Below are positions 12,903 through 31,721 of a stretch of DNA of 64,000 nucleotides, one piece after another. The stretch lies in IMG/VR virus record IMGVR_UViG_3300049048_000052, positions 1 to 64,000 of that record. One strand, given 5' to 3'. Below the pieces are notes generated by a model. The model did not search any database and had not been told where the DNA came from. It was given only the letters and a program-made list of their open reading frames with translations. Made by a program: the position numbers and the translations under genes. Every line of letters starts with the position of its first letter. The stretch's first letter is position 1.

Positions 12903-12910
12903 GAAGCTCT

Positions 12911-14136: not shown

Positions 14137-15629
14137 GCAGTCTCTTTAGACTTAGTAGGCCTGGACTTAGACTTAGCTTTAGGGGCAGCACTAACTGGCT
14201 TAGCCGTAGCCGCCTCTTTGATCTTTTTAATATTGGCCTTATCTGCAGCTGTCATTTCCCTTTGAGGTGCAGAGATGATATCTCTATAGTATTGATAATC
14301 TACTTCCTCTTCTAGGTTGAGGCCACCAACTGCTTCTGCTTGGGTTAACACACCTGAGATAGTGGCGACATCAGAGTATCTAAAGGGCTTAGCCGTTATA
14401 GTACCTGAGTCATAAGCTGAGAAGTTATCTCTAGCATCAAAGTTATACTGAATAAGTTGAGCTACGCACTGCTCTAGGAATGAATTGATAACTACCTCAA
14501 AGATAGAGTCAACAAACATATGGAACAGTTCTACTTGTCTTTCAGAGGCGCCCCCAGTACCTAGTCCTTGACTACCATCCTTCATAATGAGGTTGGGTAT
14601 GCTCATACCTCTCATCATATTCTCATCGCACAACTCAATAGCCTGTTGGAATGAGTCAGCGAAGTTATTACCAGTGGTAAGTGCTTCTAGTTTAACCGGG
14701 TGGTCCTTATCTATCTGAGTGAATACAATACCTGTCTCACTCCTCATGTTCTCTAGCTCACGGGCGGCCATCTCGTGTAGAGTGAGATACCTAGTGGTAC
14801 CGTCTAGGTCCTGCATTATCTCATCTGTATTCTGAGGAGGTACTACAGCCCATATAAGAGGCGTACCATATCTATCTAGTGCTATGGCCATCATATCTCT
14901 GAAGGCCTCCTTGAATAGATGATACTTAAGGATGGGAACAAGCACAGAGGTACCGTAAGGGTTATTACCCTCACCACCCAATGAGCAATGGATAACTTTA
15001 GACTTGGGTAGTCTAACCATAGAACCTGTAAAGTTAGGACCTACAGGCCTCTCCTTTGTATAGTAAAGAGGCACAGGTACCCACACACCAGTCAAGTAAT
15101 TGGATGTAGGGATAGCCTCGCCATGGGTTAACCTACCATGTAGATTAAGTTTAAGATCTACTTGACTAGGATGATAACTAATAACGTCCTCTATCCATGT
15201 TTGGTCTATACCATTAGGTCCCTTCTTCTTACCCCATATAATCTCTTGTGTAGAGAAGCCTGACCAGAGACAGTTAACTGTGGCATCATATATCCACTTA
15301 CTAACTCCCTTTAGATTAGCCTGTACAAACTTAGTTATATTCTTATCTGTATGAGAATACTTACCGATCTTAGCTTTAACGGATAGGGCTATCTTACGTA
15401 TCCCATCAAAGATGATAGGCTCGCTGCGTCTAGCATTATCCCAAGCTGCTAACTGATAATAGTGGGGTTTAACTACTGGAGTGAAATATTCACCAGTAGA
15501 GTTATATGCTGTAGCACGTCCCATCTGTCCGAACTCTGCAGGCCTTTTTCTATAGAGGGCTGAGGTTCTTATTGGAGGGGACGTGCTAATGTCTGATGTC
15601 TTTCCCAGGGTTGGGTGTAGGTCTACCAT
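14133..15629 (-). CDS. Portal protein (Mu gp29 / DUF935-like)
   Basis: LPKSKVIH..NPYGTSVL..KYHLFK..MAIALDRYGTP portal signature. Confidence 0.85.
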   Translation of the reverse strand: MVDLHPTLGKTSDISTSPPIRTSALYRKRPAEFGQMGRATAYNSTGEYFTPVVKPHYYQLAAWDNARRSEPIIFDGIRKIALSVKAKIGKYSHTDKNITKFVQANLKGVSKWIYDATVNCLWSGFSTQEIIWGKKKGPNGIDQTWIEDVISYHPSQVDLKLNLHGRLTHGEAIPTSNYLTGVWVPVPLYYTKERPVGPNFTGSMVRLPKSKVIHCSLGGEGNNPYGTSVLVPILKYHLFKEAFRDMMAIALDRYGTPLIWAVVPPQNTDEIMQDLDGTTRYLTLHEMAARELENMRSETGIVFTQIDKDHPVKLEALTTGNNFADSFQQAIELCDENMMRGMSIPNLIMKDGSQGLGTGGASERQVELFHMFVDSIFEVVINSFLEQCVAQLIQYNFDARDNFSAYDSGTITAKPFRYSDVATISGVLTQAEAVGGLNLEEEVDYQYYRDIISAPQREMTAADKANIKKIKEAATAKPVSAAPKAKSKSRPTKSKETA

Positions 15630-15631
15630 TT

Positions 15632-16141
15632 CTAGTACTGTGTGAAGGAAGGTCTAGGTGTACCAGCTAAGAGACTTTGGGCAGGCTTGAGTTCCTCTAT
15701 CTTTCTGTTCATGCCTTCCATGACCTCTTTCTGAGCATCGTTCTGATCCTTAACAAAGGAGTTGATAGCTTGGGTTAGTGCTTCCACCCAAAAGGGGTCC
15801 ATGCTTAAATAGTCCATACCTAAAGGTATATGAGACACATGTGCAGCCCTAACCCAATCGTCTAACCTTGCTTCCTCTCTAAGGTTGGTAGCAACACTCT
15901 CTACCCATTGTCTATATAAAAGAGGAAGATCAGGATCTATAGGTTGTTTAATAAATCTATAGTCAACGAACTCAGTTCTGTTCTCCCAATAGGAGATTAC
16001 ATCTCGGTAATATACAGGAGTGGCAGTCCTACCTTGTAGGAGAAATAAACAACTAGCTAGACACCAGTCCCTTAGTTCTGCACTTGCTTCCCAGATCTCT
16101 TCACTTGTGCAGGCCCGGTAGGTGTTTCTCCCATCATCAGC
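15632..16141 (-). CDS. -1 frameshift extension of tail assembly chaperone (GT-like product)
   Basis: The -1 frame is open from the slippery A AAA AAG (16147-16141) to 15632 and includes ORF 15632-15838. Confidence 0.8.
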   Translation of the reverse strand, partial: ADDGRNTYRACTSEEIWEASAELRDWCLASCLFLLQGRTATPVYYRDVISYWENRTEFVDYRFIKQPIDPDLPLLYRQWVESVATNLREEARLDDWVRAAHVSHIPLGMDYLSMDPFWVEALTQAINSFVKDQNDAQKEVMEGMNRKIEELKPAQSLLAGTPRPSFTQY

Positions 16142-16452
16142 TTTTTTGCTGCTGCCTGTGCGGCTTCCTTAACCTTGTCATCAGGGAAGAAAGCAGACAT
16201 GAAGAACTCAATGAAGTATTGGGTGTCCGTGGTAGACCAATCAGCCATACGCATAATAGGTTCCATTTCCCAATCTCCAGGTACTGGTGCCCCATCAACT
16301 GCGACTAAAGCCTTAGCTGCCATTAGTTCCTCAATAGCATAACCTACTTCTCTTTGTACGGATCTGAATTCTTTAACAGCATTCATTCTATCCATAAAGG
16401 TAGGAGGCTGTACCGCAATGGTTCTACCGGAGGGTAAGGTAACTTCAAACAT
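16072..16452 (-). CDS. Tail assembly chaperone (G-like)
   Basis: Size, acidic-helical pattern (VTLPSG..PPTFMD) and an internal slippery heptamer with an open -1 frame. Confidence 0.75.
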   Translation of the reverse strand: MFEVTLPSGRTIAVQPPTFMDRMNAVKEFRSVQREVGYAIEELMAAKALVAVDGAPVPGDWEMEPIMRMADWSTTDTQYFIEFFMSAFFPDDKVKEAAQAAAKKLMMGETPTGPAQVKRSGKQVQN

Positions 16453-16632: not shown

Positions 16633-19600
16633 TTGTTTTCTGAAGAAGAAGAGAAGCGATCTAGTTTAGAGTTATTGATGGGTAGGCTTAGAGGGGAGGA
16701 ATCATCTGATGATGCCCTAAGTCTAGCGGTAAGGCACCACATCTATTATGGAGGTGGTAGTGATAGCTTCATGGCTAGATACAATAGAATGGCGGATGAG
16801 AACCCCTCAGATGAGCCTAGACTCTTTGGAGATCTAAGCACACTTAGCGGTGAATTTGAACTAGATGAGAACTCTCTGAATCAGAGTATAAGAGAAGTAA
16901 CAGCGTACTCTGCATTCTCATCCTTTGATAAGGATATGCAGAATGTATTAGGTAATGGTGCTAATGCTTTAAAGAGATTACATGGTAGGTTCTACTTTGG
17001 TAGTAAGACCCAGGATGCCACCTTTGCATCTAAGAATGTCTACGACACGATATATCGTCCATTCTCTATAGATGCAGATAAAGAAGGATGGACTATAGCC
17101 CCTGAGAGTCCCTTGCATGGTATGCGGGAACATGTCCTCCAAACTATAGTTGATGCTGATGTTAATAGCGGTAGGGGTAACTTCGTTAATATAAGAAGTG
17201 AACTCAATCGTATGGTCCGGGGTAATCTATCTATTAATAAGAAGAACCTGGCACTTATAGATAAAAATACAGACGAAAGAATAGCAGGTATGATAGGTCA
17301 AAAGACCTATGTTAATAGACCCGGCATAGCGCCCTTCTTATCTATGATTCAGGGTGCTGATACTGAGATTGTTATAGATACTTACCAGTTCCAGAATAAA
17401 GCTATATCAGACTATTTATATAACTGGGTAACTAGAAAGGCCTTAGCAGGTGAGACCCCTAGACTGACGATCAGATTAGCTATGCCTAGGGATAAAGGTG
17501 TTGATAGCGCTACTAGCTATGACATTCTTGGACCTAACCTAATACAAATACTCAAGTTCAAACAATTAAAAGAGCAGTTAAATAATGACTTCCCTGATAG
17601 GGATTGGGATGACCTTATTAAGGTAGAGGTTGAGTCTGATGTACACCACTCTAAAATGTACTTCACTGATAGGGCTGCAGCTATAGGCTCCATCAACCTT
17701 ACTAGTCCTGTAGGATATAATCCTAATCAGGCAGGCTCCAACTATGAAATGATGAGAATATTTCATAGTGTAGCCCCTCAAGCTAGTATGGGGGACCTTA
17801 GGTCTGCTCTTACGGATCTTAAGATAAGACATACCTTAGGACTTAATAAGGAACAGTTAAGAGAAGAGTTCCTTTATAGACAGGTAAAAGATCTTAGGGA
17901 GCAAATGGAGAACCGTGTGAGAGGTTCCTCTATGAACTTCACTAATAGGAGAGGCCAACTAGGAATGGGTGGCGACATCTTTGAGCATCTAGAGAAGACA
18001 GTAGAGATGCTGGATGATCCTAGATTTATTGGTAGTAGATTAGGAGACATAATAGCAGGGGGCACTAAGTCTGATAAGTCTAGGGCTCGGTTTGCTAATA
18101 GGTCTGGTAGACTTGAACTCCATATGATACTAGACCAAGTAATGCTATTGCAGCATGCGGATGGTCTATTCAACACTATGGTGGAAGGTGAATTTGGTAG
18201 GTTCTCAGATGATCAGCTATCTAGGATGGATAGTACTGGAGCTAGGAGGGCAAGATATAAGAGGGTACAAAGTAAAGTATTACGTGCCCTTGCTGATAAT
18301 AGAGCGTTTATTGTAGCTGATGCTAGAAATCTAAGAGAGGGTGTTATAGATCCTCTTATGTTTGGTGCCTATGATGAGAGAACTGGTACTAATAGAGGAC
18401 CCCTAATAGCTAGAGAGGTATGGGAGCAGCACGACTATGACATAGCTAAGCTAGCTAGGAAGGCTACAGGATCAAGTGTTGATGAGAGGGTGTTATCCCT
18501 TAGTAACCAGTTCGGATTCTCTAATGAGACTTCACTCCAAGTACTGGCATTGGCTAGTGGAAATATTAGGGCTGCAGGTGTTCCTAGACAGCACGTTAAA
18601 GCTTATAGCCTGATGGCTAGATTGGATGATAGGAAGGGGGCCCCTAATCTAGTAGCACTAAGCTCCTATATGGGTAGCTCCAACTTGGGTCTATATTCAT
18701 CCCCTATGAGGGGTATTGATGACCTAGGCTCCTCTATGGACTCTGATCATCTTAGCCATGAAATTGGTCTAACTATGATGATGGGTCAGGTTAGATCCAT
18801 GATGGACTTCAATACTACTAGTGAGTATGCACTCAGCAGTAGTCAAGAATATGTTGAGATGCAGAGGTACTTCCTACCTAATTGGAGCTTAGCTATGAGT
18901 CAATTAGGGGTGTCAGCTATAGAGAATAAGAACTTCATGGAGGTCCGTAGCAGGAGTCTATGGGAGGGTAACGTTGATAGTAAATCTCTAGTAGGACTGA
19001 GAGATGGCATCCATAATATGATGCGCTCTATGAAGATAGACGAATCTGTATACAGTATAGGTACTGTAACAGATGGATCTAGCCAAAAGGTTATAGGTCT
19101 AGAACTTAGTTTAGATGCTAGGGCCTTAGCTGGCTTTGGTAAAGGCTTTGAAGGTCTACATGGTGAGAGCCGTAGGATAAGTTATAGATTCACTACCCTT
19201 AAAGGGGCGGGTGCTGATCCTATGGTCTATGCAATAGATCAAGGTAAGATTATTGGCAGATCTTTATTTGTTAATAATAGTGATGTAGAACTACCTATTC
19301 TAGATAGGACTATACAAAGTAAGTCCAGTACAGTACTTAACTCTATAGATAATACTTTAGCCTTCATAGCTACCCTAGCTGCGGAGGTAACACATAGAGC
19401 GCTTATAGATAAACCTCGTAAGACATTTGAATCCTTAGATGGCAAGGCGCAGAGAGTAGCCATAGGAGATTACCTAGCTCGTCTTGCGGGTATTAGAGGC
19501 GGTCAATTAGAGGGTCTTTATAATACTGATGTCCTAACTGATGAACATGCTCTCAAGTTAGCGGAGGAGATTAATAAACGTCTGCTCTATGGTAATGAGA

Positions 19601-22600
19601 GTATGAAGCGTGCAGCAGCATTGGCTGGTATAGATTATTCTCAGCAGGCTAGAGCAAAAGATGTTAATACATTAGTTGCTAGTATACAAAGTCTAGCTAA
19701 GGAAGCTGAAGCTATTGCAGTACACAGGAAATTAGATAAGAGTGGATATCGTAGGGCACAGCTGATAGGTTCAGGTGGTACCTCAATCATAGATCAGATG
19801 ATGTCCATGATTACAGAGAAGGGATATGCTGATCTACTCTTAGACGTAGTTAGTCATACTAATGGTATGGACTATTACAGTTCTATGTCTGCTGATATAG
19901 AAAAGGTTAAGAAAATGCTTATGGAGCCTTTTCTTACTTTTGGTCAGCATAATATATATGGTTCCTCTCAGTCTTACTTTAGATTGGGAGTAAGGGGTGT
20001 GTCTAATGCACCTCAATATAGGGATGCTATAAGTATGGCTAGGGAGGGTAATCCTATGGCCGCCTATGCACTACCTTCCTTAGCACTAACTTATGGACCT
20101 ACTACCAATCTAAGGGCTAATGGGCTTATTAGAAGTATTGCTGATAAGTCATCTATTAACTTTGGAGTGGGAGAGGGCCTAAGCTTCTTTAACACTCCTA
20201 CTCAAGTCGTGGGTGATGTAACCAGTGCTGAGATATTATCGTTCCTCTCTGTAGGTAGTCTTGTAAGAAGAGAGGAAATAGAGAACTATATTAAGTCTGT
20301 AGATCCTAAGGCTAATACTCAGGCTCTACTTAGTAAGGCATTTGGGGATAGTCAGGAGATGTTCTCCTTCACCTTTGATACGGTTAAGAAGGTAGCACAG
20401 GTACCTCAGAGACTTAAGAATGCTGTAGGTGCTAGACCCTTATACGATATAAGTGAGAATGCTCAGAGGGTATTAGAAGATCCTATGAGTGGTGAGGCAG
20501 CTACCTTAGGTAGAGATTATGTATGGAAGCTAAGGGAAGAGCTAAAGCTTCACTTCCGTAGACAGATAAATATAGACCTTGTAACTGATGAGGTAACTAG
20601 AGCAGCCCTTGAGAGGGAGATGGAAAACAAGATAGATGCTCTAGTACAACCTGATATGGATATCGGGGCTTACTTTGGTGGTCAGATAAGAAGGATACTG
20701 TCTCAACCTTTAGCTGAACTCGTTAAGAGGGAGAGAGATGAGATAGAACAGCTCTTAGGTACTGAGGTTAATACTAGTACTATAGGATCTGAATTACTTA
20801 GAGTAAGAATGCTAAGGGCTGATATGTATGGCAGCTCTTATAGAGGTGTTATAGGAGGATCTAGAAGGCATGGTGCCCCAGTGGCCCTCGTACAGCTAAC
20901 AGGCGGTTACTCTGATTACTTCTATGCTAACCCCATGTTTGGGGGGTCCCAAGGTATGAGACAAGGTCTCTTAGAGAGAGCAGAGAAGAGAGTCAAGGCT
21001 TCTATGTTATCTACTGATTGGCAGGAGAAGACAGGTGTTCTTATTCAGCCTGGTTATACTATTAGACTAGATAAGAAGACTGGTACTGCATCAGTATTTG
21101 ATGAGAGGGGTAATTGGGTAAGGGCTATAGATAGCAGGGATCAGATGGATGCTATTGAGAAAGTAGTAGAGAATACTGATATTAATGGCTTACCCTCCTT
21201 TGCCAACGTACAGGCTACATCTAGTAACAGATTGGGTGAGGATAGTGTTGAACTAATATTAAGATTCGAACAACAGAGTCCTGCCTCTGTTGATAAATAT
21301 CAGATGAACTTCGAAGCCACCTATGTAAGAAGTATTAAACCTGGGGGTGGTCGAAGGGTTGAAGGTAACTGGGCCGGTGCGCTGGTTAAGGGCGTAGCTG
21401 TCTTTACTAGACATGATAATGAGTACTCCTTCTTTGGTGGAATACTGGATCAATTGAATCAAATGCCTACCACAACGTTTGGTGGTCAGTTGGACATAAG
21501 GAATGTATTCGGTCTACTTAGCCCTGCTAACCTTAAGTCCTTTGTTTATGGACATGGTGCTGAACTGCTAACTGATAACCGTAAGAGAACTGGCTTGCTT
21601 AATGCCTATAATGATGCTGCGGTTACCAGTGGGAGTGCTGAAGCTGAGAGAGTAAGTAAGAGATTAGCAGCTGCTATACTCTTAGGTTTTGGTACCTCTA
21701 TGATAGAGAGTAGTGCCGAGGCCAATGCTATTAAGCAGAATCTATATAGGGCCGCAGCTCAGGGGGAATTGGGTGAGTACTTCCAAGGTGTGGCAGCAGC
21801 TACGGGACTGCTAGAGTTTAAGGATGAACGTGGTCAGGTTATGGATGCGGCTAGTGTATTTACTAGTGAGGCGTCCTTCAAGGTTGCTCAGACACCTCTA
21901 CTAGCTGCCATTACATCTGAGGATATAATGCAGGCCATTAATGGATCTGGGGGTAGACTGTTTGATAAGTTAAGCACTGCTATTACTAATGCAGCTAAGG
22001 AGGCTGAGGGTACTGGCTATATGGTAGCTGGAGACTTCAGACATCAACAAGCAGGCATATTACTTACAGCGTTAGATATATTTGATCAGCTATCCGTACA
22101 GGTTGATAGGAAGAGAGGACGTAACCTTGTTACTCTGCCTACTGACTTTAATGTTAAGAATGCATCTGTTAGAGCTCAGCTAGCGGCTATAGTAGGTATG
22201 GGCCTTAATGATATGGAGGATGAGACTAAGGTAGAGAATATACTGGGTAGTATGCTTAGTAAGGCACCAGTGTTAAGACTATTCATGGATCTATCTTTCT
22301 CTCACTCTAAGGAACCTGTAAGTACTAAGATGACCGGTAAGCTTGAAATGCAGCACCTCATTAAGCCCCTACAGATGTTAGCGGGTGAGTTTGCTGATAA
22401 TAAGAGCTTGGATAAGATGAGGGTCACCATAGCCAACATGTTCGCTGCTATTAGCCACGGCTCTCTGTATCAATATGTAGCCGCAGGGGACTTACCTAGT
22501 AAGAATACAATTGTAGATATAACTGATCCCTTTGTCAGGACTCCAATGTTCAAACAGAGAATGTTGGGTATATATGGCACAGGGCTACATACGGATAAGT

Positions 22601-25600
22601 TCGAGCAGCTTAGGAAGGAGTACGGACAATATACTGAGGAACTACAAGTCCTCATAAGAGATAAGACAGTATCAGCTGATAGACATGAGGTCAAGGTCAT
22701 AATGACTAAGCTGGCTACTGTACAGGGTCAACTTTTAGAGCTGGCTAGATATTACCAACTGTTTGAGGATAAACCTGCCTCGGTTGGTATATCTAATGCA
22801 GTAGTAGGGGCCATGAATAATCCTAGATTTGGATTCTTTGTGCCCTACATGGAACCTATCATGTCTGAACATGGCGTCATCCTTAAGGTAGATAAGACTA
22901 GAGGTTTCTATAGCTTTATGCCATCTGGAGATGACATAAGACTAATGGGGGCCCAGTTTGGTAATTATATAGACCGTATAGTTCAAGCAACTATAGTGCT
23001 GCAATCAGGCTTTGCTCCTGGAGGACCCCTAGATGATATGTTTACTCGCATGTCTAAGATTAGGGGAAGTACCCATATAGCTATGAGTAATGAAGAATGG
23101 CAGCATCTGGATAGATTCTATAAGACAGCCCTTGAGATGCCTGCCCTATTAGCTGATGCTGCCTCAGGTACTAGGTTACAAAGAGCAACTGGTGCTGCCA
23201 TACCCTTTAGAGGTGGAGTGAGTACCCCTGCGGCCTCTGGTTTAGTACCTCCTGAAATGGTGGTGCTTGCTAGTGAGACATTAGCTAAACATGGCCTTAG
23301 AGTATCTGAGACTAAATGGAGAATGTTAGAGGATACTGATGCAGAGATGTCCAGAACTCATAGCACTCTCCAGAGTCTTGCTTATGAGTCTATGTCTCAG
23401 GCCGATAAGAACATAATAGAGAATAAGAGAAAGTTCCTAACAGGTCAGAGATTCGCATTAACTGAGGGTTTATCTGAACAGGGTACCAAGGGTCTACTAG
23501 ATAGGGCCCTAAAGGAAAGCCGTGAGCTAGCAGAAGACTATAGCAATGCGATGACCTTTACTGACCTGAAAGAAAGACAGAGACATCTAGGTAAGGTCTT
23601 TGGTAGGGCCGATCGTATGGCTAGACGTTTCAGCACTACTGTCTATGATCTGAATAAGAGAGGGGACTCCTTCGCTCAGCTGGCCGCCATCAGTGAGATG
23701 GAAATATGGAAGTCGCAGGCTAGAATATCTAGTCTAGAGGCACAGAACCAGGTAACTCCATTATCAAGTAAGGCTGCTGAAATACTAGATGCTGAAAGGA
23801 ATCAGCTCCGTATGTTTAAGGAGCTACCCTTCTATGTAACCAACTTTACCTTGGGTAGTGCTAACTCTGCCAGGAAAACTATGGAGGTTAGCCACCTAGC
23901 ACTTGAGGGTAAGCTAAGAGGTAATATTGTTAGAAGCATAATGTCTGCTGATATTACTAAGGAGATATTCGAGCTGGATGCAGATCACAGGACAGACTTC
24001 CTTGATTATAAGTTAACTACTCTAATAGATCATCTGGAGACTGCTAATGCTAAGAGGGATAATCCTGGTCCTCATGTGAAAGAAAGTGTTAGAGCTATGA
24101 GGAGTAGCCGTCTAGGAGGTGAGGCGGATTATAATAATCGTTTAGCTAGTAGGCTCGTAGATATTAGGGATAGGGTTAGAAGGGGTGGTACTAAGACGGC
24201 TGATGTCCTGGCTGAGATCAATGCTGCTTATGCTATGTATGACGTAAGTGGCGTATCATCTGCTATAGGCTTCCGTTCTCCTCCCTTTGGTTCTACTGAG
24301 CCCCAATTACAGATACTAGATGTCCTAAGGGATATAGCGGTAGTGAATGAGTATGCCCAAGGTATTGATGGGGGTAGTGGTAGATTAATCCAATACAGTG
24401 GGGCTGATGAGAGAAATGCATCATTGACCCTACTAAGTCCTATATCTATCCTAACTATGAACTTGGGTGACTTTGATGGTGACCCTTATACATTCATATT
24501 CTCTGAGCTACAAGGGTTAGAGCATAAGGTGATGGAGAAGAAGGATAATATTAAGATGCTCCAGTTTAGAAGGTCTAAGTGGAGTAAGGAACTATCACGC
24601 TTAGAACCAGATACCTTGGATTACGAAGATCTGAAGACTAGGGTTGATAATACTGAGAAACAGATCCTAAAGAATGAGGAGGAGATACCAAGGATCAGAT
24701 TAAAGATTAAGGAGATGGATGAACATCTACAAAGAGATATTATAGATAAGGGTGTGGCCCATAAACAGGTCGCGGCCTATATGGGTATCAATGCTAAATA
24801 CTTATTAACTGAGAGTCAGGGTGGTTATCTGGCTGACTCTGATAAATTAGATGCTAATGTCTTGTTCACCTTTATTGAACAGGGTAGAGGTTTGTATCCT
24901 GGTATAGATGATAAATATAAGAGTATCGATACACTCTACAAAGCCTTAGATCGACTCATAGAACCTACCTCCATGAGTGGGCCTATGAACCTTAATATGC
25001 ACCTATCTAGTATAGAAGCCCTAAAGAGTAGGGCCGCTGAGCTAGCTCAGGATATGAGTGATAACAGTGGTGGGGTATACGAACGTATTATCAATAACAA
25101 TGAGGTAGCTAGCGCGGTATTTGCGGAGTTACAGAACTTTGTTAATACTTATGAGGATTCAACCTCAGTTGAGATTGAGGACTACAAGTCAGGCTTAGCA
25201 GATCAGACTGTCAGCATGTACTATAAGATGCTTGGCACTAATGAGTTCCAGAAGATGATGAAGAGGGCTGGGGGAACTCAGATGGAGCTCTCCACGTATG
25301 ACATGCTAACAAAGGTCTTGGGTAAGGCGGGTGGTGATATCCTTGGTAAGACCTATAACTCTATAGTAGGTACTCTATTCGCTGATAGTCCTATGTTGGC
25401 AGTGGGTCATGTACTGACTAGGAGTGATGAGGTTAGCTCTGGGGTTGAGCAATATATAGATAATCTTATAAATACAGGTAAGTTAAGCGGAGATGAATGG
25501 TCTACCGGGGCCGACTTTATAGAGAATATAAAGACTAGTATGTCTAATGCAGAGCAGCTACAGGGATTCATGAAAGATATCCAGCAGCTACTCAGAGATA

Positions 25601-27786
25601 GTATTAAGTTAAAGGGTGGTACTAATATTCTTAGTGCTTTGAGAGATAAGGCTCAACAATATGAGGATCCCAACCTAGACGATGCAGGTAGAACAAGGGT
25701 TCTAAATGACATTGTTAAGGATATAGGTCCAGGACCTGGTCTCAAGTCATTAATGAGGCTTGATAGCTTTGTTAATAATATTAATGGTAGTATCTCTGAC
25801 TTTGAGTTAGCAGATGAGTTTGGAGTGTCCAAACTCGGGGATGAGTACGCATATATAACAGGAACTCTACAGGCAGCTGATCTTATTAATGAATCAGACC
25901 CCACTAAGGCTTATAGGACTAATAAAATGGTAGCCGCCTATAAGACTGTTAGAGATATCCAGCATATGGTTACTGCTTTTAACTTCGAGAGAGGTAGCAG
26001 TAGCAAGCAGTTCATGGATAACTTTATAAGGGTAGAGGAGAGAAGGGGCCAAAAGGATGTAATACTAGATAAGTTTAGAAATAGGAGTAATGCTGAGTTT
26101 GGTGAGTATAGTAGAGCATTAGCATCTTACAACGATGATGATCTTACTCCTAAGCCTAATGATAGCTATGATGATAGATTAACTGCTTTTGAGCAGAAGT
26201 ATGGAGAGTCTGGGCTGCTATTGTTCGCACATATGTATGAACAAAGCAAGGCTGGAACTAGAGGAGTCTTTGGAGAGTTCGGTCAGAACTTACTAGCCTT
26301 TGCACATAAGGATAGTATCAGGAAGACTCTAACTAATGTTATGGAAGGAAGATCAGAGACTATAGCAATGCCTGCCACTATGGATCAGGATATATTCACC
26401 TCTGATATAACCTTAACCCTAATGAACCTGGCCTCTACTAATAAGCTGGATCCTTCAGCCGCAGCCTTATTCTATCAGAGTATGGAAGGTCTCCTTAAGG
26501 TAGGGGGTATAGCATCAGATCCTAAAGATGTGTTGATGAATATCCTATCCTCTACCACTAGGAACAATAATGGTAATGAGGCTGCTACTAAAATAAGTGC
26601 TCAGATAGGGGCTCTTAATATGTTAGAACAAGAGGGCAGTGAGTTTAGACTTACCTTTAGTCAAGGTGGGCAGGAACATACTGCTATCTATAGCAGCCTC
26701 TTGGATTATCTACAGCAGTCCCTTACTGAAACAAGGGCAGGTCTAGAGAGTAAGATGATCCAAAGCTTCGTGAAGACTATTATTAATGATGGAGTATCTA
26801 GTGGTAGAAAGCCTAAGAATGCTAGAGAGTTCGCTACCTATATTCTTAAACCTAAGGGTTCGGATTCAGATACTGAGCCTGATGAGGCTATGATTACTAA
26901 GATAGTTGAGAATATAGAATCTATGTCCGAAGTAGATTCTATATTTAAGGAGAATGTTAGTACTAAACCTGTTCTAGAAGGCAAATATGCTGAGGTAGCC
27001 CGTAAGAGTATTAGTCGTATGGCTAGTGAGGATAAAGCCAATACTATGGACCTAATACTACCGGCATTCTTAAGTATTATGGGTCAAGCCATTGCTAGTG
27101 GATCTGTTGAACCTGAGGCTTTTCAAGATGTTGTTGGTTCTACGTTAGTGGCCGCAGCATACAGTAGACCTAACTTTGGTTCTAGGACTGCTACTGGTTT
27201 TATGGCTAATGTAGGTATAGGAAGTGCATTCAAATTCAGGATGGCAATTAATGAGGCGGGTGGGGATCCTGGTGAAGGCATAACCAGACTTATAGCTAGA
27301 GAACTAACCTTTAACGCAATAAGCGCTTGGGCTGCACCTAAGCTCACTAACCTAATGACTCAAAAGCTATTCGGAGCTAGACCTCAAACCCTAGATAGGG
27401 ATTACCATGAGGGTAGTAGGAACGTAGCAGGTATGATGAGTGGTGCAGTACTATCAGCCGCACTAGGAGTACTAGGAGGTAACGTAGCCTCTGGTGTTGT
27501 AGGAATGATGAGCACTGTACCTACTGCTAATCTAGTGGATACTGCGCTTGATTATATAGCAGTTAAAGCCAGAGCTATAGGAGCTCAAACGTTCCTAGAG
27601 GAATCTGATGCTATTAATATATTTAATGAGGAAGATGGAGAGTCTGTAGATGCAATATACTCAGATGAACCTATATCTTTCTATGGATCTAATCCTCAAT
27701 CCTTAGCAGAGGCTGTATATACGGATAACACTATGGATACTATTGTGGTGGAGCCCGTCAATTTGTTTGAGGATTATGATTCTTAG
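16633..27786 (+). CDS. Giant 3717-aa protein: tandem PLD domains plus two-barrel RNA polymerase centre (candidate virion RNAP)
   Basis: H339xK341xxxxD346..GSIN and H654xK656..GSSN PLD motifs; FRSPP about 65 aa before MNLGDFDGDP (D2613-D2617, nt 24469-24483); TTG start with GAGGGG SD. Confidence 0.75.
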   Translation: MFSEEEEKRSSLELLMGRLRGEESSDDALSLAVRHHIYYGGGSDSFMARYNRMADENPSDEPRLFGDLSTLSGEFELDENSLNQSIREVTAYSAFSSFDKDMQNVLGNGANALKRLHGRFYFGSKTQDATFASKNVYDTIYRPFSIDADKEGWTIAPESPLHGMREHVLQTIVDADVNSGRGNFVNIRSELNRMVRGNLSINKKNLALIDKNTDERIAGMIGQKTYVNRPGIAPFLSMIQGADTEIVIDTYQFQNKAISDYLYNWVTRKALAGETPRLTIRLAMPRDKGVDSATSYDILGPNLIQILKFKQLKEQLNNDFPDRDWDDLIKVEVESDVHHSKMYFTDRAAAIGSINLTSPVGYNPNQAGSNYEMMRIFHSVAPQASMGDLRSALTDLKIRHTLGLNKEQLREEFLYRQVKDLREQMENRVRGSSMNFTNRRGQLGMGGDIFEHLEKTVEMLDDPRFIGSRLGDIIAGGTKSDKSRARFANRSGRLELHMILDQVMLLQHADGLFNTMVEGEFGRFSDDQLSRMDSTGARRARYKRVQSKVLRALADNRAFIVADARNLREGVIDPLMFGAYDERTGTNRGPLIAREVWEQHDYDIAKLARKATGSSVDERVLSLSNQFGFSNETSLQVLALASGNIRAAGVPRQHVKAYSLMARLDDRKGAPNLVALSSYMGSSNLGLYSSPMRGIDDLGSSMDSDHLSHEIGLTMMMGQVRSMMDFNTTSEYALSSSQEYVEMQRYFLPNWSLAMSQLGVSAIENKNFMEVRSRSLWEGNVDSKSLVGLRDGIHNMMRSMKIDESVYSIGTVTDGSSQKVIGLELSLDARALAGFGKGFEGLHGESRRISYRFTTLKGAGADPMVYAIDQGKIIGRSLFVNNSDVELPILDRTIQSKSSTVLNSIDNTLAFIATLAAEVTHRALIDKPRKTFESLDGKAQRVAIGDYLARLAGIRGGQLEGLYNTDVLTDEHALKLAEEINKRLLYGNESMKRAAALAGIDYSQQARAKDVNTLVASIQSLAKEAEAIAVHRKLDKSGYRRAQLIGSGGTSIIDQMMSMITEKGYADLLLDVVSHTNGMDYYSSMSADIEKVKKMLMEPFLTFGQHNIYGSSQSYFRLGVRGVSNAPQYRDAISMAREGNPMAAYALPSLALTYGPTTNLRANGLIRSIADKSSINFGVGEGLSFFNTPTQVVGDVTSAEILSFLSVGSLVRREEIENYIKSVDPKANTQALLSKAFGDSQEMFSFTFDTVKKVAQVPQRLKNAVGARPLYDISENAQRVLEDPMSGEAATLGRDYVWKLREELKLHFRRQINIDLVTDEVTRAALEREMENKIDALVQPDMDIGAYFGGQIRRILSQPLAELVKRERDEIEQLLGTEVNTSTIGSELLRVRMLRADMYGSSYRGVIGGSRRHGAPVALVQLTGGYSDYFYANPMFGGSQGMRQGLLERAEKRVKASMLSTDWQEKTGVLIQPGYTIRLDKKTGTASVFDERGNWVRAIDSRDQMDAIEKVVENTDINGLPSFANVQATSSNRLGEDSVELILRFEQQSPASVDKYQMNFEATYVRSIKPGGGRRVEGNWAGALVKGVAVFTRHDNEYSFFGGILDQLNQMPTTTFGGQLDIRNVFGLLSPANLKSFVYGHGAELLTDNRKRTGLLNAYNDAAVTSGSAEAERVSKRLAAAILLGFGTSMIESSAEANAIKQNLYRAAAQGELGEYFQGVAAATGLLEFKDERGQVMDAASVFTSEASFKVAQTPLLAAITSEDIMQAINGSGGRLFDKLSTAITNAAKEAEGTGYMVAGDFRHQQAGILLTALDIFDQLSVQVDRKRGRNLVTLPTDFNVKNASVRAQLAAIVGMGLNDMEDETKVENILGSMLSKAPVLRLFMDLSFSHSKEPVSTKMTGKLEMQHLIKPLQMLAGEFADNKSLDKMRVTIANMFAAISHGSLYQYVAAGDLPSKNTIVDITDPFVRTPMFKQRMLGIYGTGLHTDKFEQLRKEYGQYTEELQVLIRDKTVSADRHEVKVIMTKLATVQGQLLELARYYQLFEDKPASVGISNAVVGAMNNPRFGFFVPYMEPIMSEHGVILKVDKTRGFYSFMPSGDDIRLMGAQFGNYIDRIVQATIVLQSGFAPGGPLDDMFTRMSKIRGSTHIAMSNEEWQHLDRFYKTALEMPALLADAASGTRLQRATGAAIPFRGGVSTPAASGLVPPEMVVLASETLAKHGLRVSETKWRMLEDTDAEMSRTHSTLQSLAYESMSQADKNIIENKRKFLTGQRFALTEGLSEQGTKGLLDRALKESRELAEDYSNAMTFTDLKERQRHLGKVFGRADRMARRFSTTVYDLNKRGDSFAQLAAISEMEIWKSQARISSLEAQNQVTPLSSKAAEILDAERNQLRMFKELPFYVTNFTLGSANSARKTMEVSHLALEGKLRGNIVRSIMSADITKEIFELDADHRTDFLDYKLTTLIDHLETANAKRDNPGPHVKESVRAMRSSRLGGEADYNNRLASRLVDIRDRVRRGGTKTADVLAEINAAYAMYDVSGVSSAIGFRSPPFGSTEPQLQILDVLRDIAVVNEYAQGIDGGSGRLIQYSGADERNASLTLLSPISILTMNLGDFDGDPYTFIFSELQGLEHKVMEKKDNIKMLQFRRSKWSKELSRLEPDTLDYEDLKTRVDNTEKQILKNEEEIPRIRLKIKEMDEHLQRDIIDKGVAHKQVAAYMGINAKYLLTESQGGYLADSDKLDANVLFTFIEQGRGLYPGIDDKYKSIDTLYKALDRLIEPTSMSGPMNLNMHLSSIEALKSRAAELAQDMSDNSGGVYERIINNNEVASAVFAELQNFVNTYEDSTSVEIEDYKSGLADQTVSMYYKMLGTNEFQKMMKRAGGTQMELSTYDMLTKVLGKAGGDILGKTYNSIVGTLFADSPMLAVGHVLTRSDEVSSGVEQYIDNLINTGKLSGDEWSTGADFIENIKTSMSNAEQLQGFMKDIQQLLRDSIKLKGGTNILSALRDKAQQYEDPNLDDAGRTRVLNDIVKDIGPGPGLKSLMRLDSFVNNINGSISDFELADEFGVSKLGDEYAYITGTLQAADLINESDPTKAYRTNKMVAAYKTVRDIQHMVTAFNFERGSSSKQFMDNFIRVEERRGQKDVILDKFRNRSNAEFGEYSRALASYNDDDLTPKPNDSYDDRLTAFEQKYGESGLLLFAHMYEQSKAGTRGVFGEFGQNLLAFAHKDSIRKTLTNVMEGRSETIAMPATMDQDIFTSDITLTLMNLASTNKLDPSAAALFYQSMEGLLKVGGIASDPKDVLMNILSSTTRNNNGNEAATKISAQIGALNMLEQEGSEFRLTFSQGGQEHTAIYSSLLDYLQQSLTETRAGLESKMIQSFVKTIINDGVSSGRKPKNAREFATYILKPKGSDSDTEPDEAMITKIVENIESMSEVDSIFKENVSTKPVLEGKYAEVARKSISRMASEDKANTMDLILPAFLSIMGQAIASGSVEPEAFQDVVGSTLVAAAYSRPNFGSRTATGFMANVGIGSAFKFRMAINEAGGDPGEGITRLIARELTFNAISAWAAPKLTNLMTQKLFGARPQTLDRDYHEGSRNVAGMMSGAVLSAALGVLGGNVASGVVGMMSTVPTANLVDTALDYIAVKARAIGAQTFLEESDAINIFNEEDGESVDAIYSDEPISFYGSNPQSLAEAVYTDNTMDTIVVEPVNLFEDYDS

Positions 27787-28082
27787 AGCTTTAACTTAGT
27801 CAATAAAGTCTTTATCATCTTGAGGGGTACTATATTAAGACTGGCTACTATAGTAGAAGGATAACCCGGTACCGTGTTTGAGCTTAATTCAAGTAGCTTA
27901 CCTTCCTTGTCATATAGAGAGAATCTGCATTCTACTGTACTCCCTATAGTCTCTTGGGGGAGTTCAAAGTCCTTGAACTCTAGAGGCTCGTTTGCCTTAA
28001 CTAATTGTGCAAACAGTATAGTAGGTAAAATGGTAACTTCGTAGATTAGAATGTAATCTTCTAAGGGATTGGGCCTACTCAT
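27783..28082 (-). CDS. Hypothetical protein
   Basis: Overlapping-operon ORF. Confidence 0.55.
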   Translation of the reverse strand: MSRPNPLEDYILIYEVTILPTILFAQLVKANEPLEFKDFELPQETIGSTVECRFSLYDKEGKLLELSSNTVPGYPSTIVASLNIVPLKMIKTLLTKLKL

Positions 28083-28350
28083 ATATTGACTGACTATCCT
28101 TGTATGTAAAAGAGAATGAGGTTATACCTTTCTGTAATAGTATAGAGGATATTATCGAGGCTATGTCCAAAACATCATGCCAGTCCTCATACTCTATGAG
28201 TAGAACAAAGTACTCCTCATAGTTCTCTTTTACCTCTACTGCTATGTAGGTATCTATATTATTTAGTACCTCTTCTAAAGCAATGGGTAGATCACCAGTA
28301 GACTGAATGTCCTCTACTGTGATATAGGCTTTATCAAATAAATTACTCAT
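28075..28350 (-). CDS. Hypothetical acidic protein
   Basis: Overlapping-operon ORF. Confidence 0.55.
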   Translation of the reverse strand: MSNLFDKAYITVEDIQSTGDLPIALEEVLNNIDTYIAVEVKENYEEYFVLLIEYEDWHDVLDIASIISSILLQKGITSFSFTYKDSQSIYE

Positions 28351-28373
28351 TGTGTATTCGTTTGGTTGTTGTG

Positions 28374-28637
28374 TTATTTGGTGTACCCAATCTTCTTTAG
28401 AATGGAACCTATTAATAATTGTAGTACATATAAGTTAGCGGCCCAGTTATAGCCCACGCCTTTCCTAGTTCTACGTATAAGGGATGTGCGAAAGGTTCTA
28501 AGGTGTATAGATTCCTCTAGATAGAAGAGATCTATAAGGAATTGTATTGTCTCCCTAGGGGTCATTCCTAGTTCACTGGATATACTATCTAGTTTGTCCT
28601 TATATGTATCGGTAAGTGAGATTCTTGTTCTATACAT
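28374..28637 (-). CDS. Possible ribbon-helix-helix (CopG-like) DNA-binding protein
   Basis: RTRISLTDTYKDKLDSISSELGMTPRETIQFLI pattern. Confidence 0.5.
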   Translation of the reverse strand: MYRTRISLTDTYKDKLDSISSELGMTPRETIQFLIDLFYLEESIHLRTFRTSLIRRTRKGVGYNWAANLYVLQLLIGSILKKIGYTK

Positions 28638-28639
28638 AT

Positions 28640-29734
28640 TTATGTGAGGGAGAAGTTTTGACCTTCCCTACCATTATAGTTTTCCATGTACTTAGGAGGT
28701 ACTCCTGTATTCCAGAAGTTGGACATGAGACCTGATTGACCTGGAGGTAACCATAGGGCACTCCCTGTTACCGTAGCAGGATGAACTAATATCTCAGGCT
28801 CTTGATCCATTTCTGCAGGTTGCACTACCCTAGAGACTTCCTTACCAAAGAATTCTACCTTTGCATTGGTAGGGGCAGTAGAAGTAGGTCCGGGCCAGGT
28901 GATTTGTAGGTAGGGCTTATGTAGAGTTATTAGGCCACTAACAGGAACCCCATTAGTGTCAGTTGGGGAGGACTTCATTAGTATGGTAAATGGGTGATCA
29001 GATGTCACCTGGGCCGCTACCGCTTTACCGCCAAATACTTGTATGGAATAGGGCACAGGTAAATTACCCCATTGTTTACATGTAATAGTAAGGGTGTCAT
29101 TAGCAGGGTTACGATTGAAACCTCCAGGAGGTGGTGGACCCGGTGGATCAGCCTCTGGTGTAACTACAGTACTTCCTACTTGAAACCCAGGAGGTCTACC
29201 TGTAGTAAGAGGATCAATACCAGGATCCACGGCTGGCATAGCTATAGGGCAACTAGGATTAGTAGAACGTAATCCGCTAACTTGAAGGATATCATAAGGC
29301 CTGTCCCATCTGACCTCCCCTATCTTCTCACCTGTAAATGAGATGGCTAAGTAGAAACGATTACGGCTATACTCCCACTTGCGGAAGTAGTCATGCGTCT
29401 CAGTATTACTAGAGTAGAACTCATGTTCAGTAAACTTAGTCAGCAGTTGGTAATAATTCGTACCAGCATACTCCTCTTCAAACCTACCTAGATCAACTAG
29501 ATCTAAACGATCGTCATCGTTATTGGTAAACTCAAGGGATGAGAATGTACGTGCATAAGGCGTACCGTCCTGTAGGGCTAATTGGCTGGATACTTCCCAG
29601 TCTGACTTTAGCTGTCCTACATGCACATTAAAGGCGGCCCTGGTCATAGTACTGGGACCACTAGAACTAAAGGAAGGCATCCCAGGTAAACTGGGTTCGT
29701 CTACCTGGGGTAAGCTGAATTTATCTAAGGTCAT
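28640..29734 (-). CDS. Probable baseplate-associated protein
   Basis: Follows PAAR gene; Pro-rich linker and beta-rich C-terminus. Confidence 0.4.
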   Translation of the reverse strand: MTLDKFSLPQVDEPSLPGMPSFSSSGPSTMTRAAFNVHVGQLKSDWEVSSQLALQDGTPYARTFSSLEFTNNDDDRLDLVDLGRFEEEYAGTNYYQLLTKFTEHEFYSSNTETHDYFRKWEYSRNRFYLAISFTGEKIGEVRWDRPYDILQVSGLRSTNPSCPIAMPAVDPGIDPLTTGRPPGFQVGSTVVTPEADPPGPPPPGGFNRNPANDTLTITCKQWGNLPVPYSIQVFGGKAVAAQVTSDHPFTILMKSSPTDTNGVPVSGLITLHKPYLQITWPGPTSTAPTNAKVEFFGKEVSRVVQPAEMDQEPEILVHPATVTGSALWLPPGQSGLMSNFWNTGVPPKYMENYNGREGQNFSLT

Positions 29735-29736
29735 GA

Positions 29737-30006
29737 TTAATCATCTATAAATGTATCTTTTGAGGATGTCATTATCTTACCGCATACCACCTTATCCTTC
29801 CGACGTACTATTGGTCTGCTATCACAGAACCTCCTCTTACTCCCAGTTATAATGGGGCCTGGTACAGTCTTATCTAGAAGACGTGCTAGACCCCTGCTGT
29901 TAACAAAGGTAGTACGAGAGGCAGTGAGCACGGGACCTGATGGTACAAGGGGCTCACATATAGATTGCACCTTATCTAAGAGACGTACAGCACCTAAACC
30001 GAACAT
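29737..30006 (-). CDS. PAAR-repeat tail spike tip protein
   Basis: Three repeats AVRLLD / LARLLD / IVRRKD with GPVLTAS..VN, GPIITGS..CD, GKIMTSS..ID. Confidence 0.8.
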   Translation of the reverse strand: MFGLGAVRLLDKVQSICEPLVPSGPVLTASRTTFVNSRGLARLLDKTVPGPIITGSKRRFCDSRPIVRRKDKVVCGKIMTSSKDTFIDD

Positions 30007-30826: not shown

Positions 30827-31241
30827 AAGATTAAGTGTCTTATATAAAAGGTTTATACTTATTAGATAATATGGATAGAGGGGTATATGTTGGGCCCTTC
30901 TAGCTTCATATTACTGTAAAAATTATATGGTATTTTTATAGATCGTTATTGAGAGGTTTTCTCTATTGGTATAGCCAATAGGGATATAAGGTTTAGCTCT
31001 TGTTTATCTAGGGTAAGTCTTATGTATACCTGAGCTTCTAAAAAGGGGAATTTTTGTTAGGATTCTCTTAGGTATTATGTGGGGGTAGGTACTCCCCCCT
31101 GGGGGGTCGGCCTGATTCATTTATTAGGATAGAGGAATTCGATGGATTCCTTGTATATCCTGATTAATGATTGGGTCAGCATATGAGTAATGGGTCCTCA
31201 CGGGCCCTTTACTTGTAGTGTAACCCTAGGAGGGTACGAAC

Positions 31242-31661: not shown

Positions 31662-31721
31662 TAGGTGTCATAAGAAAAGGCCTATATGGCCCTTTTCTTA
31701 TGTTTATAGAGGAATACTCTC

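What the first reader, a model, noticed from the sequence alone, without database searches (positions are those of the whole stretch)
16633..27786. 3717-aa virion-module protein with a cellular-type RNA polymerase active site (candidate injected vRNAP)
Seen: FRSPP..MNLGDFDGDP (aa about 2547-2618), a possible beta-like RVEGNWAGALVKGV segment (aa about 1575-1588), and a location among structural genes. Established: crAss-like phi14:2 gp66 and Thermus P23-45 gp96 are huge virion-delivered two-barrel RNAPs, and N4 injects a roughly 3500-aa RNAP of another family. Inference: this protein is injected and transcribes the 31-41 kb early cassettes.
Basis: partly seen in the sequence, partly recalled or inferred. 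Interest (0 to 1): 0.9.

Follow-up and report, generated by a model that had tools for sequence, protein, structure and literature searches.

The report
Giant cyanophage virion RNA polymerase candidate
A 3717-residue, cysteine-free protein encoded beside the portal gene of a Microcystis-phage-like virus contains a module that folds like the second-largest subunit of cellular RNA polymerases, followed by the polymerase metal-binding motif, so this phage group, described in the literature as lacking an RNA polymerase, probably carries its own and injects it.

Summary
It is the homologue of Ma-LMM01 gp080, an unannotated 3562-aa protein, and belongs to a closed family of about 100 giant proteins. 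An AlphaFold model of aa 1101-2300 (pLDDT 76) matches only second-largest RNA polymerase subunits, in both the PDB and a viral structure library. The DFDGD half is supported by motifs only. DxDGD is invariant and R-x-(x)-P lies 65 aa upstream, but the model of aa 2500-3300 did not fold a barrel there and matched nothing, and no sequence or profile search reached any polymerase. New evidence bears on injection. The protein has no cysteine, and 100 of 102 relatives have none either, which is the published signature of N4-type ejected polymerases. It has two conserved C-terminal hydrophobic segments. It is linked to the portal gene in about 20 loci, and gp080 is silent at 1 h when early genes are already transcribed. 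An N-terminal two-HKD PLD domain is also present. Verdict: a two-barrel polymerase module is very likely, and delivery by the virion for early transcription is plausible but untested. It is a new variant of a known kind.

The parts
16633..27786 (+). Giant gene, 3717 aa. Alternative ATG start at 16678. Homologue of Ma-LMM01 gp080.
17320..18762 (+). N-terminal PLD-superfamily domain (aa about 230-710) with two HKD motifs
   Evidence: PLDc_2 matches 8 of 11 family members, best E 4.5e-8. H339, K341, N355, H654, K656 and N684 are conserved in at least 90% of the family. UniProt names the Ma-LMM01 homologue a PLD phosphodiesterase domain protein.
17647..17703 (+). HKD motif 1 (H339-x-K341-x4-D346-x5-G-S-x-N355)
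18592..18684 (+). HKD motif 2 (H654-x-K656 ... G-S-S-N684)
19933..23532 (+). Fragment aa 1101-2300, modelled with AlphaFold (pLDDT 75.7, pTM 0.68). It matches second-largest RNA polymerase subunits.
20875..21567 (+). Core of the beta-like barrel (aa 1415-1645). It contains G-x-Y-S-D1428, a beta-rich insert of about 145 aa, R1575 ... K1586-G-V, and N-P-x-N-L-K1635-S.
   Evidence: invariant columns; strands of the model; mapped onto the eight invariant residues listed in PMC2919709
23266..24165 (+). Poorly conserved, helical, coiled-coil-like linker (aa 2212-2511) between the two conserved halves
   Evidence: conservation profile; only coiled-coil noise in the PDB; long helices in both models
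24250..24507 (+). Beta'-like motif block (aa 2540-2625): F-R2548-S-P-P-x-G, then 65 aa, then N-L-G-D2613-F-D2615-G-D2617-P-Y-T
   Evidence: The fold is not confirmed.
24469..24483 (+). DFDGD codons, the candidate Mg-binding aspartate triad
   Evidence: invariant
25288..25419 (+). Conserved 44-residue helix (aa 2886-2929; G2897, A2899, G2900, L2904, G2905, K2906, Y2908, N2909). Candidate bridge helix by position and pattern only.
   Evidence: Pairwise and profile comparisons with E. coli beta' are not significant.
25564..25626 (+). Invariant block Q-x-L-R2988-D-x-I-K2992-x-K2994, function unassigned
27052..27108 (+). C-terminal hydrophobic segment 1 (aa 3474-3492), at 93-94% of protein length across the family
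27424..27504 (+). C-terminal Gly/Ala-rich hydrophobic segment 2 (aa 3598-3624), at 97-98% of protein length across the family
14133..15629 (-). Mu-type portal gene, linked to the giant gene in about 20 related loci
16072..16452 (-). Small conserved gene (phrog_32670, no cysteine) that always lies between the portal and the giant gene
27783..30006 (-). Block of small genes (27783-28082, 28640-29734, 29737-30006 and others) conserved downstream of the giant gene in relatives

Best explanation
The gene encodes a single-chain, two-barrel (cellular-type) nucleotide polymerase embedded in a multi-domain virion protein. The domains, from N to C terminus, are a two-HKD PLD phosphodiesterase, a beta-like module (aa about 1100-2200, barrel at 1415-1645), a long coiled-coil connector, a beta'-like block carrying R-x-(x)-P and the DFDGD aspartate triad (aa about 2540-2640) followed by conserved helices, and a tail with two membrane-type hydrophobic segments. 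The proposed mechanism is inferred, not shown. The protein is made in the middle or late phase and packaged in the head near the portal. It is expelled through the tail with the DNA, passing the periplasm unfolded, which would explain why it has no cysteine. It is then anchored at the membrane by its C-terminus and transcribes the first phage genes independently of host RNA polymerase. The PLD domain would act on nucleic acid or lipid during entry.
For: Fold: the model of aa 1101-2300 (pLDDT 75.7) gives 464 PDB matches at E<=10. The top 50 are all Rpb2/beta/Rpo132 subunits (best E 1.1e-3, probability up to 1.00, 255-371 aligned columns). In BFVD, after the self-family hit, about 20 viral RNA polymerase second subunits follow. 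The control model of aa 2500-3300 gave only noise, so the signal is specific. Motifs: candidates for all eight residues invariant in two-barrel polymerases (PMC2919709) are present and conserved. They are D1428, R1575, K1586, R2548, P2550/2551, D2613, D2615 and D2617. The D1428-to-R1575 spacing is 147 aa, against 142 aa in Rpb2. Ejection: there are 0 Cys in 3717 aa, against 0.85% Cys in the neighbouring genes (P about 2e-14), and 100 of 102 relatives also have none. The same suppression is published for the ejected polymerases N4 gp50 and DEV gp71 (PMC11445570). Two C-terminal hydrophobic segments are conserved. Linkage to the portal gene is conserved in either orientation. Ma-LMM01 gp080 shows no reads at 0 and 1 h and rises together with the portal gene, while early gene gp063 is already high at 1 h.
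Against: No barrel fold was obtained around DFDGD (pLDDT below 50). The helical region downstream matches no beta' or any other polymerase. No sequence or profile method links either half to RNA polymerases. Foldseek E-values are only about 1e-3, and the aligned residues were not shown. The conserved proline sits at +3 from the arginine in the family, not at +2. Morimoto et al. 2018 (PMC5780444) found sigma-70-like sequences upstream of Ma-LMM01 early genes and concluded that host RNA polymerase is used. No virion proteomics or rifampicin data exist for this phage group.
Confidence: 0.55

Rival explanations
1. It is a phage-encoded two-barrel RNA polymerase that works only inside the cell, as a non-virion enzyme for middle or late genes like phiKZ nvRNAP or P23-45 gp64, and is not injected.
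For: gp080 belongs to the large middle class B5 in Ma-LMM01. There is no direct evidence that it is in virions.
Against: Family-wide loss of cysteine, C-terminal membrane-type segments, a size of 3000-5400 aa and portal linkage are unexplained for a cytoplasmic enzyme, but match ejected N4-type polymerases.
Confidence: 0.12
2. It is an ejected multi-enzyme ('polyvalent') protein whose two-barrel module has a different nucleotidyl-transfer role: priming, RNA-templated synthesis as in QDE-1/RdRPs, DNA synthesis as in archaeal PolD, or pulling DNA into the cell. It would not be promoter-specific early transcription.
For: Two-barrel enzymes include RdRPs and PolD (PMC2919709; PMC10770324). Sigma-70-like early promoters are reported in Ma-LMM01. 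A PLD nuclease-type domain is fused to it.
Against: All structural neighbours are DNA-dependent RNA polymerase subunits with the long insert typical of beta/Rpb2. Every characterised virion-borne two-barrel enzyme transcribes early genes.
Confidence: 0.15
3. It is a structural or ejection protein without polymerase activity. The beta-like fold would be a relic, and DFDGD would bind metal for another purpose.
For: The beta' half could not be folded or matched. The DFDGD pentapeptide occurs by chance elsewhere.
Against: All candidate catalytic residues in both halves are (nearly) invariant across about 100 proteins that share only 15-30% identity. This points to purifying selection on an active site.
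Confidence: 0.1
4. It is a tail tape-measure protein fused to a polymerase, as in P23-45 gp96.
For: Giant size, C-terminal hydrophobic segments and a coiled-coil stretch.
Against: The gene sits beside the portal and head genes, not in a tail module. Most of the protein is globular alpha/beta in the models. At 0.15 nm per residue, 3700 aa would measure about 550 nm, against the 260 nm tail reported for MaMV-DH01. The 0.15 nm per residue figure comes from my general knowledge.
Confidence: 0.05

Closest known systems
Microcystis phage Ma-LMM01 gp080 (and MaMV-DC/DH01 and Microcoleus phage My-WqHQDG homologues); PHROG 31006
   Same: It is a true homologue over its full length (24-26% identity in two long blocks; PHROG hit E 1.7e-147) with the same neighbours. 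It has the same NLGDFDGD block.
   Different: Those proteins are annotated as hypothetical. The papers on these phages state that they lack an RNA polymerase. The present contig is larger (251,780 bp against 162-182 kb).
Virion RNA polymerases of phiKZ/AR9-type jumbo myoviruses (split beta/beta'-like subunits)
   Same: Both are contractile-tailed phages with multisubunit-type beta-like architecture. A phiKZ-like RNA polymerase subunit (phage Noxifer) is among the structural hits. These enzymes are injected for early transcription, according to the papers listed.
   Different: Here both halves lie in one 3717-aa chain with PLD and membrane-type domains. No sequence similarity was detected.
Single-chain two-barrel vRNAPs: crAss-like phi14:2 gp66 and Thermus phage P23-45 gp96
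   Same: Each is a giant virion protein with the beta-like barrel before the DxDxD barrel, recognisable by motif but not by sequence.
   Different: Those two are QDE-1-like or minimal enzymes. Here the 50 best structural neighbours listed are multisubunit beta/Rpb2 subunits, and neither of those entries is among them. gp96 is a tape measure, whereas this gene is portal-linked. The connector between the barrels is about 900 aa here.
N4 gp50 / DEV gp71 (Schitoviridae vRNAP)
   Same: About 3400-3500 aa, ejected, membrane-associated, with transmembrane helices and essentially no cysteine. This is the same design for delivery.
   Different: The N4 enzyme is a T7-like single-subunit polymerase. No T7-type family, fold or motif C aspartate is found here.
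PLD superfamily nucleases (poxvirus nicking-joining enzyme, PLD3/4 exonucleases, Nuc)
   Same: Two HKD motifs. There are weak profile hits to exactly these proteins, and Pfam PLDc_2 matches.
   Different: E-values are weak for the window protein itself (0.011 as part of the whole protein, 3.9e-4 as an isolated fragment). The substrate is unknown. Fusion of a PLD domain to a polymerase was not found in the papers searched.

Membership tests
Two-barrel (double-psi beta-barrel) RNA polymerase superfamily | Beta/Rpb2-type barrel module recognisable by fold | tested here: met
   The model of aa 1101-2300 has pLDDT 75.7. The top 50 PDB hits are all second-largest RNA polymerase subunits, with probability up to 1.0. 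BFVD gives the same kind of hits.
Two-barrel (double-psi beta-barrel) RNA polymerase superfamily | Beta'/Rpb1-type barrel presenting the DxDxD loop | tested here: inconclusive
   The model of aa 2500-3300 has pLDDT below 50 over aa 2533-2625 and no fold match. The fragment may have cut the barrel.
Two-barrel (double-psi beta-barrel) RNA polymerase superfamily | Eight invariant residues (Rpb2 D837, K979, K987; Rpb1 R446, P448, D481, D483, D485; PMC2919709) | tested here: met
   Candidates D1428, R1575, K1586, R2548, P2550/P2551, D2613, D2615 and D2617 are all conserved in at least 90% of the family or invariant. The assignment is by pattern and spacing, not by structural superposition. The family-wide proline is at +3.
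Two-barrel (double-psi beta-barrel) RNA polymerase superfamily | Detectable sequence or profile similarity to RNA polymerase families (Pfam Rpb1/Rpb2 domains, PDB chains) | tested here: not met
   Pfam, PDB phmmer/hmmsearch and hhalign against E. coli RpoB/RpoC were all negative. The 1.84-billion-protein profile search returned only the family itself.
Two-barrel (double-psi beta-barrel) RNA polymerase superfamily | Bridge helix and trigger loop after the catalytic barrel | tested here: inconclusive
   A conserved 44-residue helix at aa 2886-2929 has a K-x3-D-x3-K-T-x-N-S pattern like E. coli beta' 781-793, but the alignment score equals that of shuffled sequence.
Two-barrel (double-psi beta-barrel) RNA polymerase superfamily | Template-dependent NTP polymerisation | not testable with these tools
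   Requires biochemistry.
Single-chain virion RNAPs of the gp66 (crAss-like) / gp96 (P23-45) type | Both barrels in one polypeptide, with the beta-like barrel first | tested here: met
   The beta-like core lies at aa 1415-1645 and DFDGD at aa 2613.
Single-chain virion RNAPs of the gp66 (crAss-like) / gp96 (P23-45) type | Homology or closest structural similarity to gp66, gp96 or QDE-1 | tested here: not met
   None of these entries is among the 50 listed PDB hits, which are all multisubunit enzymes. There is no PHROG or sequence link.
Single-chain virion RNAPs of the gp66 (crAss-like) / gp96 (P23-45) type | Presence in virions and rifampicin-resistant early transcription | not testable with these tools
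   Only indirect indicators are available.
N4-type virion RNAP (T7-like single-subunit polymerase) | T7-like palm and fingers with motifs A, B and C | tested here: not met
   There is no Pfam or PDB match. No invariant aspartate lies downstream of aa 2989 that could serve as motif C. The model of aa 2500-3300 is all-helical and matches no polymerase.
N4-type virion RNAP (T7-like single-subunit polymerase) | Ejection-protein signature: suppression of cysteine plus membrane-type helices | tested here: met
   0 Cys in 3717 aa and 0 Cys in 100 of 102 relatives. Hydrophobic segments lie at aa 3474-3492 and 3598-3624. This is a shared property, not homology.
PLD (HKD) phosphodiesterase superfamily | Two HxK(x)4D(x)nG(S/T)xN motifs | tested here: met
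   aa 339-355 and 654-684. The key residues are invariant or nearly so. PLDc_2 matches 8 of 11 members.
Tail tape-measure proteins | Gene located in the tail module; length proportional to tail length | tested here: not met
   The gene is flanked by the portal and a conserved small gene, in either orientation. Its length far exceeds what a 260 nm tail would need (plus the general rule of 0.15 nm per residue).

The most novel reading that the evidence does not exclude
A whole lineage of contractile-tailed cyanophages (Ma-LMM01-like phages and jumbo relatives, about 100 protein clusters) injects a previously unrecognised kind of RNA polymerase. It would be a beta-beta' fusion of multisubunit type in one cysteine-free chain of 3000-5400 aa, tethered to a PLD enzyme and a membrane anchor. 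That would make early transcription independent of the host and would explain why Ma-LMM01 infection leaves the host transcriptome almost unchanged.
Probability: 0.45. Interest if true: 0.85.

Novelty: new variant of a known kind. Interest (0 to 1): 0.75.

Why it matters
Ma-LMM01 and its relatives are the cultured model phages of the bloom-forming, toxin-producing Microcystis. Their biology has been interpreted on the premise that they have no RNA polymerase and depend on host sigma-70 transcription. An injected polymerase would change how their early programme, their host takeover and their escape from host defences are understood. For polymerase evolution, this would be a fourth independent design of virion-borne RNA polymerase, after the N4 type, the phiKZ split type and the crAss/P23-45 single-chain type. 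It is the only one that keeps a beta/Rpb2-like module with its long insert inside a single chain. The convergent loss of cysteine with N4-type enzymes supports a general rule for proteins that travel through the tail and the periplasm. The hypothesis can be tested directly in an existing phage-host pair.

Tried and rejected
1. Near-identity DNA search in phage genomes found nothing.

2. Pfam on the whole protein and on 14 fragments around DFDGD gave no polymerase family, even at E<=10.

3. PDB sequence searches with the whole protein and with four profiles (A2, A4, A9, A10) returned only coiled-coil noise, antibody CDRs with DFDGD/DYDGD, and a dehydrogenase.

4. hhalign of the family profiles against E. 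coli RpoB and RpoC gave probabilities of at most 17%. Only the DFDGD letters aligned, at P = 1.4e-3.

5. I tried to obtain a diverse beta' alignment with the search for homologous proteins. It returned only 97-100% identical gamma-proteobacterial sequences, so that search was wasted.

6. Smith-Waterman alignment of the bridge-helix-like helix against RpoC scored the same as shuffled sequence.

8. The model of aa 2500-3300 was probably cut badly. It starts inside or just after the coiled-coil linker, so the first half of a barrel may be missing. No prediction jobs remained to repeat it.

9. The T7/N4-like polymerase reading was rejected (see membership test).

10. The tape-measure reading was rejected because of gene position.

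11. PHROG scans of the most distant relatives (P0119, P0125, P0128) gave nothing, so no bridge to crAss-type vRNAPs was found.
Full report
**1. The observation**

The window holds one uninterrupted ORF at 16633-27786 on the + strand. It is 3717 aa long with a TTG start, and an in-frame ATG lies at 16678.

The window is the first 64 kb of a 251,780-bp IMG/VR contig. Upstream, on the opposite strand, lie a tail sheath gene (1889-4384), a major head protein gene (9158-10486) and a Mu-type portal gene (14133-15629).

**2. What the protein is related to**

There is no close DNA relative among sequenced phages. At the protein level it matches PHROG 31006, a family of unknown function (E 1.7e-147). 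It also matches the giant hypothetical proteins of Microcystis phages Ma-LMM01 (gp080, 3562 aa), MaMV-DC, MaMV-DH01 and others, and of Microcoleus phage My-WqHQDG.

A word-indexed search found 39 relatives of 2622-5384 aa. A full HMMER profile scan of 1.84 billion representatives found 104 clusters. Nearly all are 3000-5400 aa long, and none is a known polymerase. The family is therefore closed, giant and unannotated.

The published genome papers on this phage group state that they encode no RNA polymerase and rely on the host enzyme (PMC5780444; PMC9927357). My literature searches found no description of this protein as a polymerase.

**3. Conservation map**

A full-length alignment shows conservation over almost the whole protein. 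It has sharply invariant positions in five regions:
- two HKD motifs (aa 339-355 and 654-684);
- a block at aa 1253-1266;
- a block at aa 1421-1641 containing G-x-Y-S-D1428, R1575, K1586-G-V and N-P-x-N-L-K1635-S;
- a block at aa 2548-2617 containing R-S-P-P-x-G and G-D-F-D-G-D;
- helices at aa 2897-2909 and 2981-2994.

A poorly conserved coiled-coil-like stretch (aa 2212-2511) separates the two central halves. DxDGD is invariant in 56 of 56 sequences, and it is present even in the most distant relatives. K1586 is invariant in 55 of 55 sequences.

**4. Structural test of the beta-like half**

An AlphaFold2 model of aa 1101-2300, built with 33 sequences, reached pLDDT 75.7 and pTM 0.68. It has a beta-rich core at aa about 1400-1630.

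Foldseek against the PDB gave 464 matches at E<=10. All 50 listed are second-largest RNA polymerase subunits: vaccinia Rpo132; Pol I, II, III, IV and V Rpb2-type subunits; archaeal subunit B; and M. tuberculosis and T. thermophilus beta. The best E is 1.1e-3, probabilities reach 1.00, and 255-371 columns are aligned.

Against BFVD, the first hit is the Ma-LMM01 homologue itself. It is followed by about twenty viral RNA polymerase second subunits from poxviruses, mimiviruses, pithoviruses, baculovirus, nudivirus and a phiKZ-like phage. The other model, treated the same way, gave only unrelated helical proteins. The signal is therefore specific to this fragment.

**5. Mapping onto the polymerase signature**

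Ruprich-Robert and Thuriaux list eight residues that are invariant in all two-barrel polymerases (PMC2919709):
- one Asp and two basic residues in the beta-type barrel (Rpb2 D837, K979, K987; QDE-1 D709, R738, K743);
- R-x-P plus three Asp in the beta'-type barrel.

Here D1428 follows a strand and a G-x-Y-S motif, much as G-Y-N-x-E-D does in beta. R1575 and K1586 flank a loop between two strands of the model. The D-to-R spacing is 147 aa, against 142 aa in Rpb2, and is filled with beta structure. This resembles the insert of multisubunit beta rather than the roughly 30 aa in QDE-1. K1635 in N-P-x-N-L-K-S resembles the N-P-x-x-x-P-S-R motif that carries Rpb2 R1020.

In the second half, R2548, P2550/2551, D2613, D2615 and D2617 complete the set. 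All of these assignments are by pattern and spacing (inference), because the tools do not print the structural alignment.

**6. The beta'-like half is not demonstrated**

The model of aa 2500-3300 reached pLDDT 67 overall, but below 50 across aa 2533-2625. The rest is helical and has no structural neighbour (best E 0.03, a catenin).

Every sequence-based comparison was negative: Pfam, four PDB profiles, and hhalign against RpoB and RpoC. The one exception is an alignment of the DFDGD letters themselves at P = 1.4e-3. The profile of the DFDGD block hits antibody CDR loops equally well, so the pentapeptide is not evidence by itself.

The fragment probably began too late. A segment just before the linker (aa about 2185-2200, consensus G-x-K-x4-G-x-V-x-T) may belong to the same barrel.

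**7. Evidence bearing on injection**

- The protein has no cysteine in 3717 residues. Its neighbours have 0.85% Cys, which gives P about 2e-14. Of 102 relatives of 3000-5400 aa, 100 have none and two have one.
- The same suppression is documented for the ejected N4 gp50 and DEV gp71 polymerases and their ejection partners. There it is attributed to passage through the periplasm (PMC11445570).
- Two hydrophobic Gly/Ala-rich segments sit at 93-94% and 97-98% of the protein length throughout the family.
- The order portal, small gene (16072-16452), giant gene, three small genes is conserved in about 20 loci. In three loci the giant gene is inverted but still adjoins the same small gene and the portal.
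- In the Ma-LMM01 transcriptome, gp080 has no signal at 0 and 1 h and rises at 3-6 h together with the portal gene. The early gene gp063 is already high at 1 h. If gp080 acts on early genes, it must therefore arrive with the virion.

None of this is direct proof.

**8. Other domains**

The N-terminal region is a two-HKD PLD-superfamily domain. PLDc_2 matches 8 of 11 members, with a best E of 4.5e-8. There are weak profile hits to the poxvirus nicking-joining enzyme and the PLD4 exonuclease. UniProt names the Ma-LMM01 homologue accordingly. Its substrate is unknown. The most distant relatives lack a recognisable HKD motif.

**9. Against the interpretation**

[quoted passage not shown] Their early genes (gp054-063) lie beyond the gp064 homologue.

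The cassette region is rich in terminator-like hairpins (35 found against 10.7 +/- 3.9 expected) and is not enriched in sigma-70-like sites (22 against 29.5). This is compatible with several models and identifies no promoter.

**10. Comparison with known systems, and verdict**

Functionally, the closest systems are the virion RNA polymerases of phiKZ/AR9 phages, crAss-like phi14:2 gp66, P23-45 gp96 and N4 gp50. The protein is not a sequence member of any of them.
- Its beta-like module looks like that of the multisubunit enzymes.
- Its single-chain layout is like gp66 and gp96.
- Its delivery signature is like N4 gp50.

I rate a two-barrel polymerase module at about 0.85 probability, virion delivery at about 0.65, and the full chain (injected enzyme transcribing early genes) at about 0.5-0.55. 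It is a new variant of a known kind. It is interesting because it occurs in a cultured, ecologically important phage group believed to lack a polymerase, and because simple experiments can settle the question.

Noticed in passing
window 31200-41800 (+), also 46667-46698: About 20 small genes are arranged as repeated cassettes. Each ATG is preceded by a GC hairpin (GGGCC-N3-6-GGCCC) with a T-run, then about 10 nt, then (G)TCCTAGGAGGAC. That last element is itself an inverted repeat containing the Shine-Dalgarno sequence. A second variant is TTATCCTAGG...TCCTAGGTTAGGAGATACACT. Terminator-like hairpins number 35 against 10.7 expected, and sigma-70-like sites are not enriched. There is no room for a classical promoter between the hairpin and the start codon.
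   Followed up: partly
window 50858-50929 (+); also 50941-51009, 51519-51592, 53358-53432, 57971-58043: A tRNA cluster. One tRNA has anticodon CUA (amber-suppressor type; ARAGORN labels it Pyl). Two tRNA-like genes have irregular anticodon loops. tRNA-Phe and tRNA-Met are also present. This may hint at TAG recoding somewhere in this 252-kb phage. The giant ORF itself contains no in-frame stop.
   Followed up: no
window 41819-46660 (+): A second very large ORF (1613 aa, 15 Cys) matches PHROG 30979 (unknown function), the family of Ma-LMM01 gp064, which lies next to that phage's early genes. It has no Pfam domain.
   Followed up: partly
window 12118-13558 (+): A DNA-binding protein gene and a cysteine-rich HNH endonuclease gene (18 Cys in 215 aa) sit on the opposite strand between the head genes and the portal gene. 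No counterpart of either was detected in the related loci, so this may be a mobile insertion.
   Followed up: no
L006, L019, L027 (related loci): In these relatives the giant gene is inverted relative to the portal and head module and lies upstream of it on the same strand. It still directly adjoins the homologue of the small gene 16072-16452.
   Followed up: partly
window 1889-4384 (-) and 16072-16452 (-): The 831-aa tail sheath protein and the small portal-adjacent protein also contain no cysteine. I did not check whether this holds in their homologues.
   Followed up: no
window 18000-28000: GC skew is strongly positive (0.14-0.23) along the giant gene, compared with about 0 in the upstream minus-strand structural genes.
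   Followed up: no
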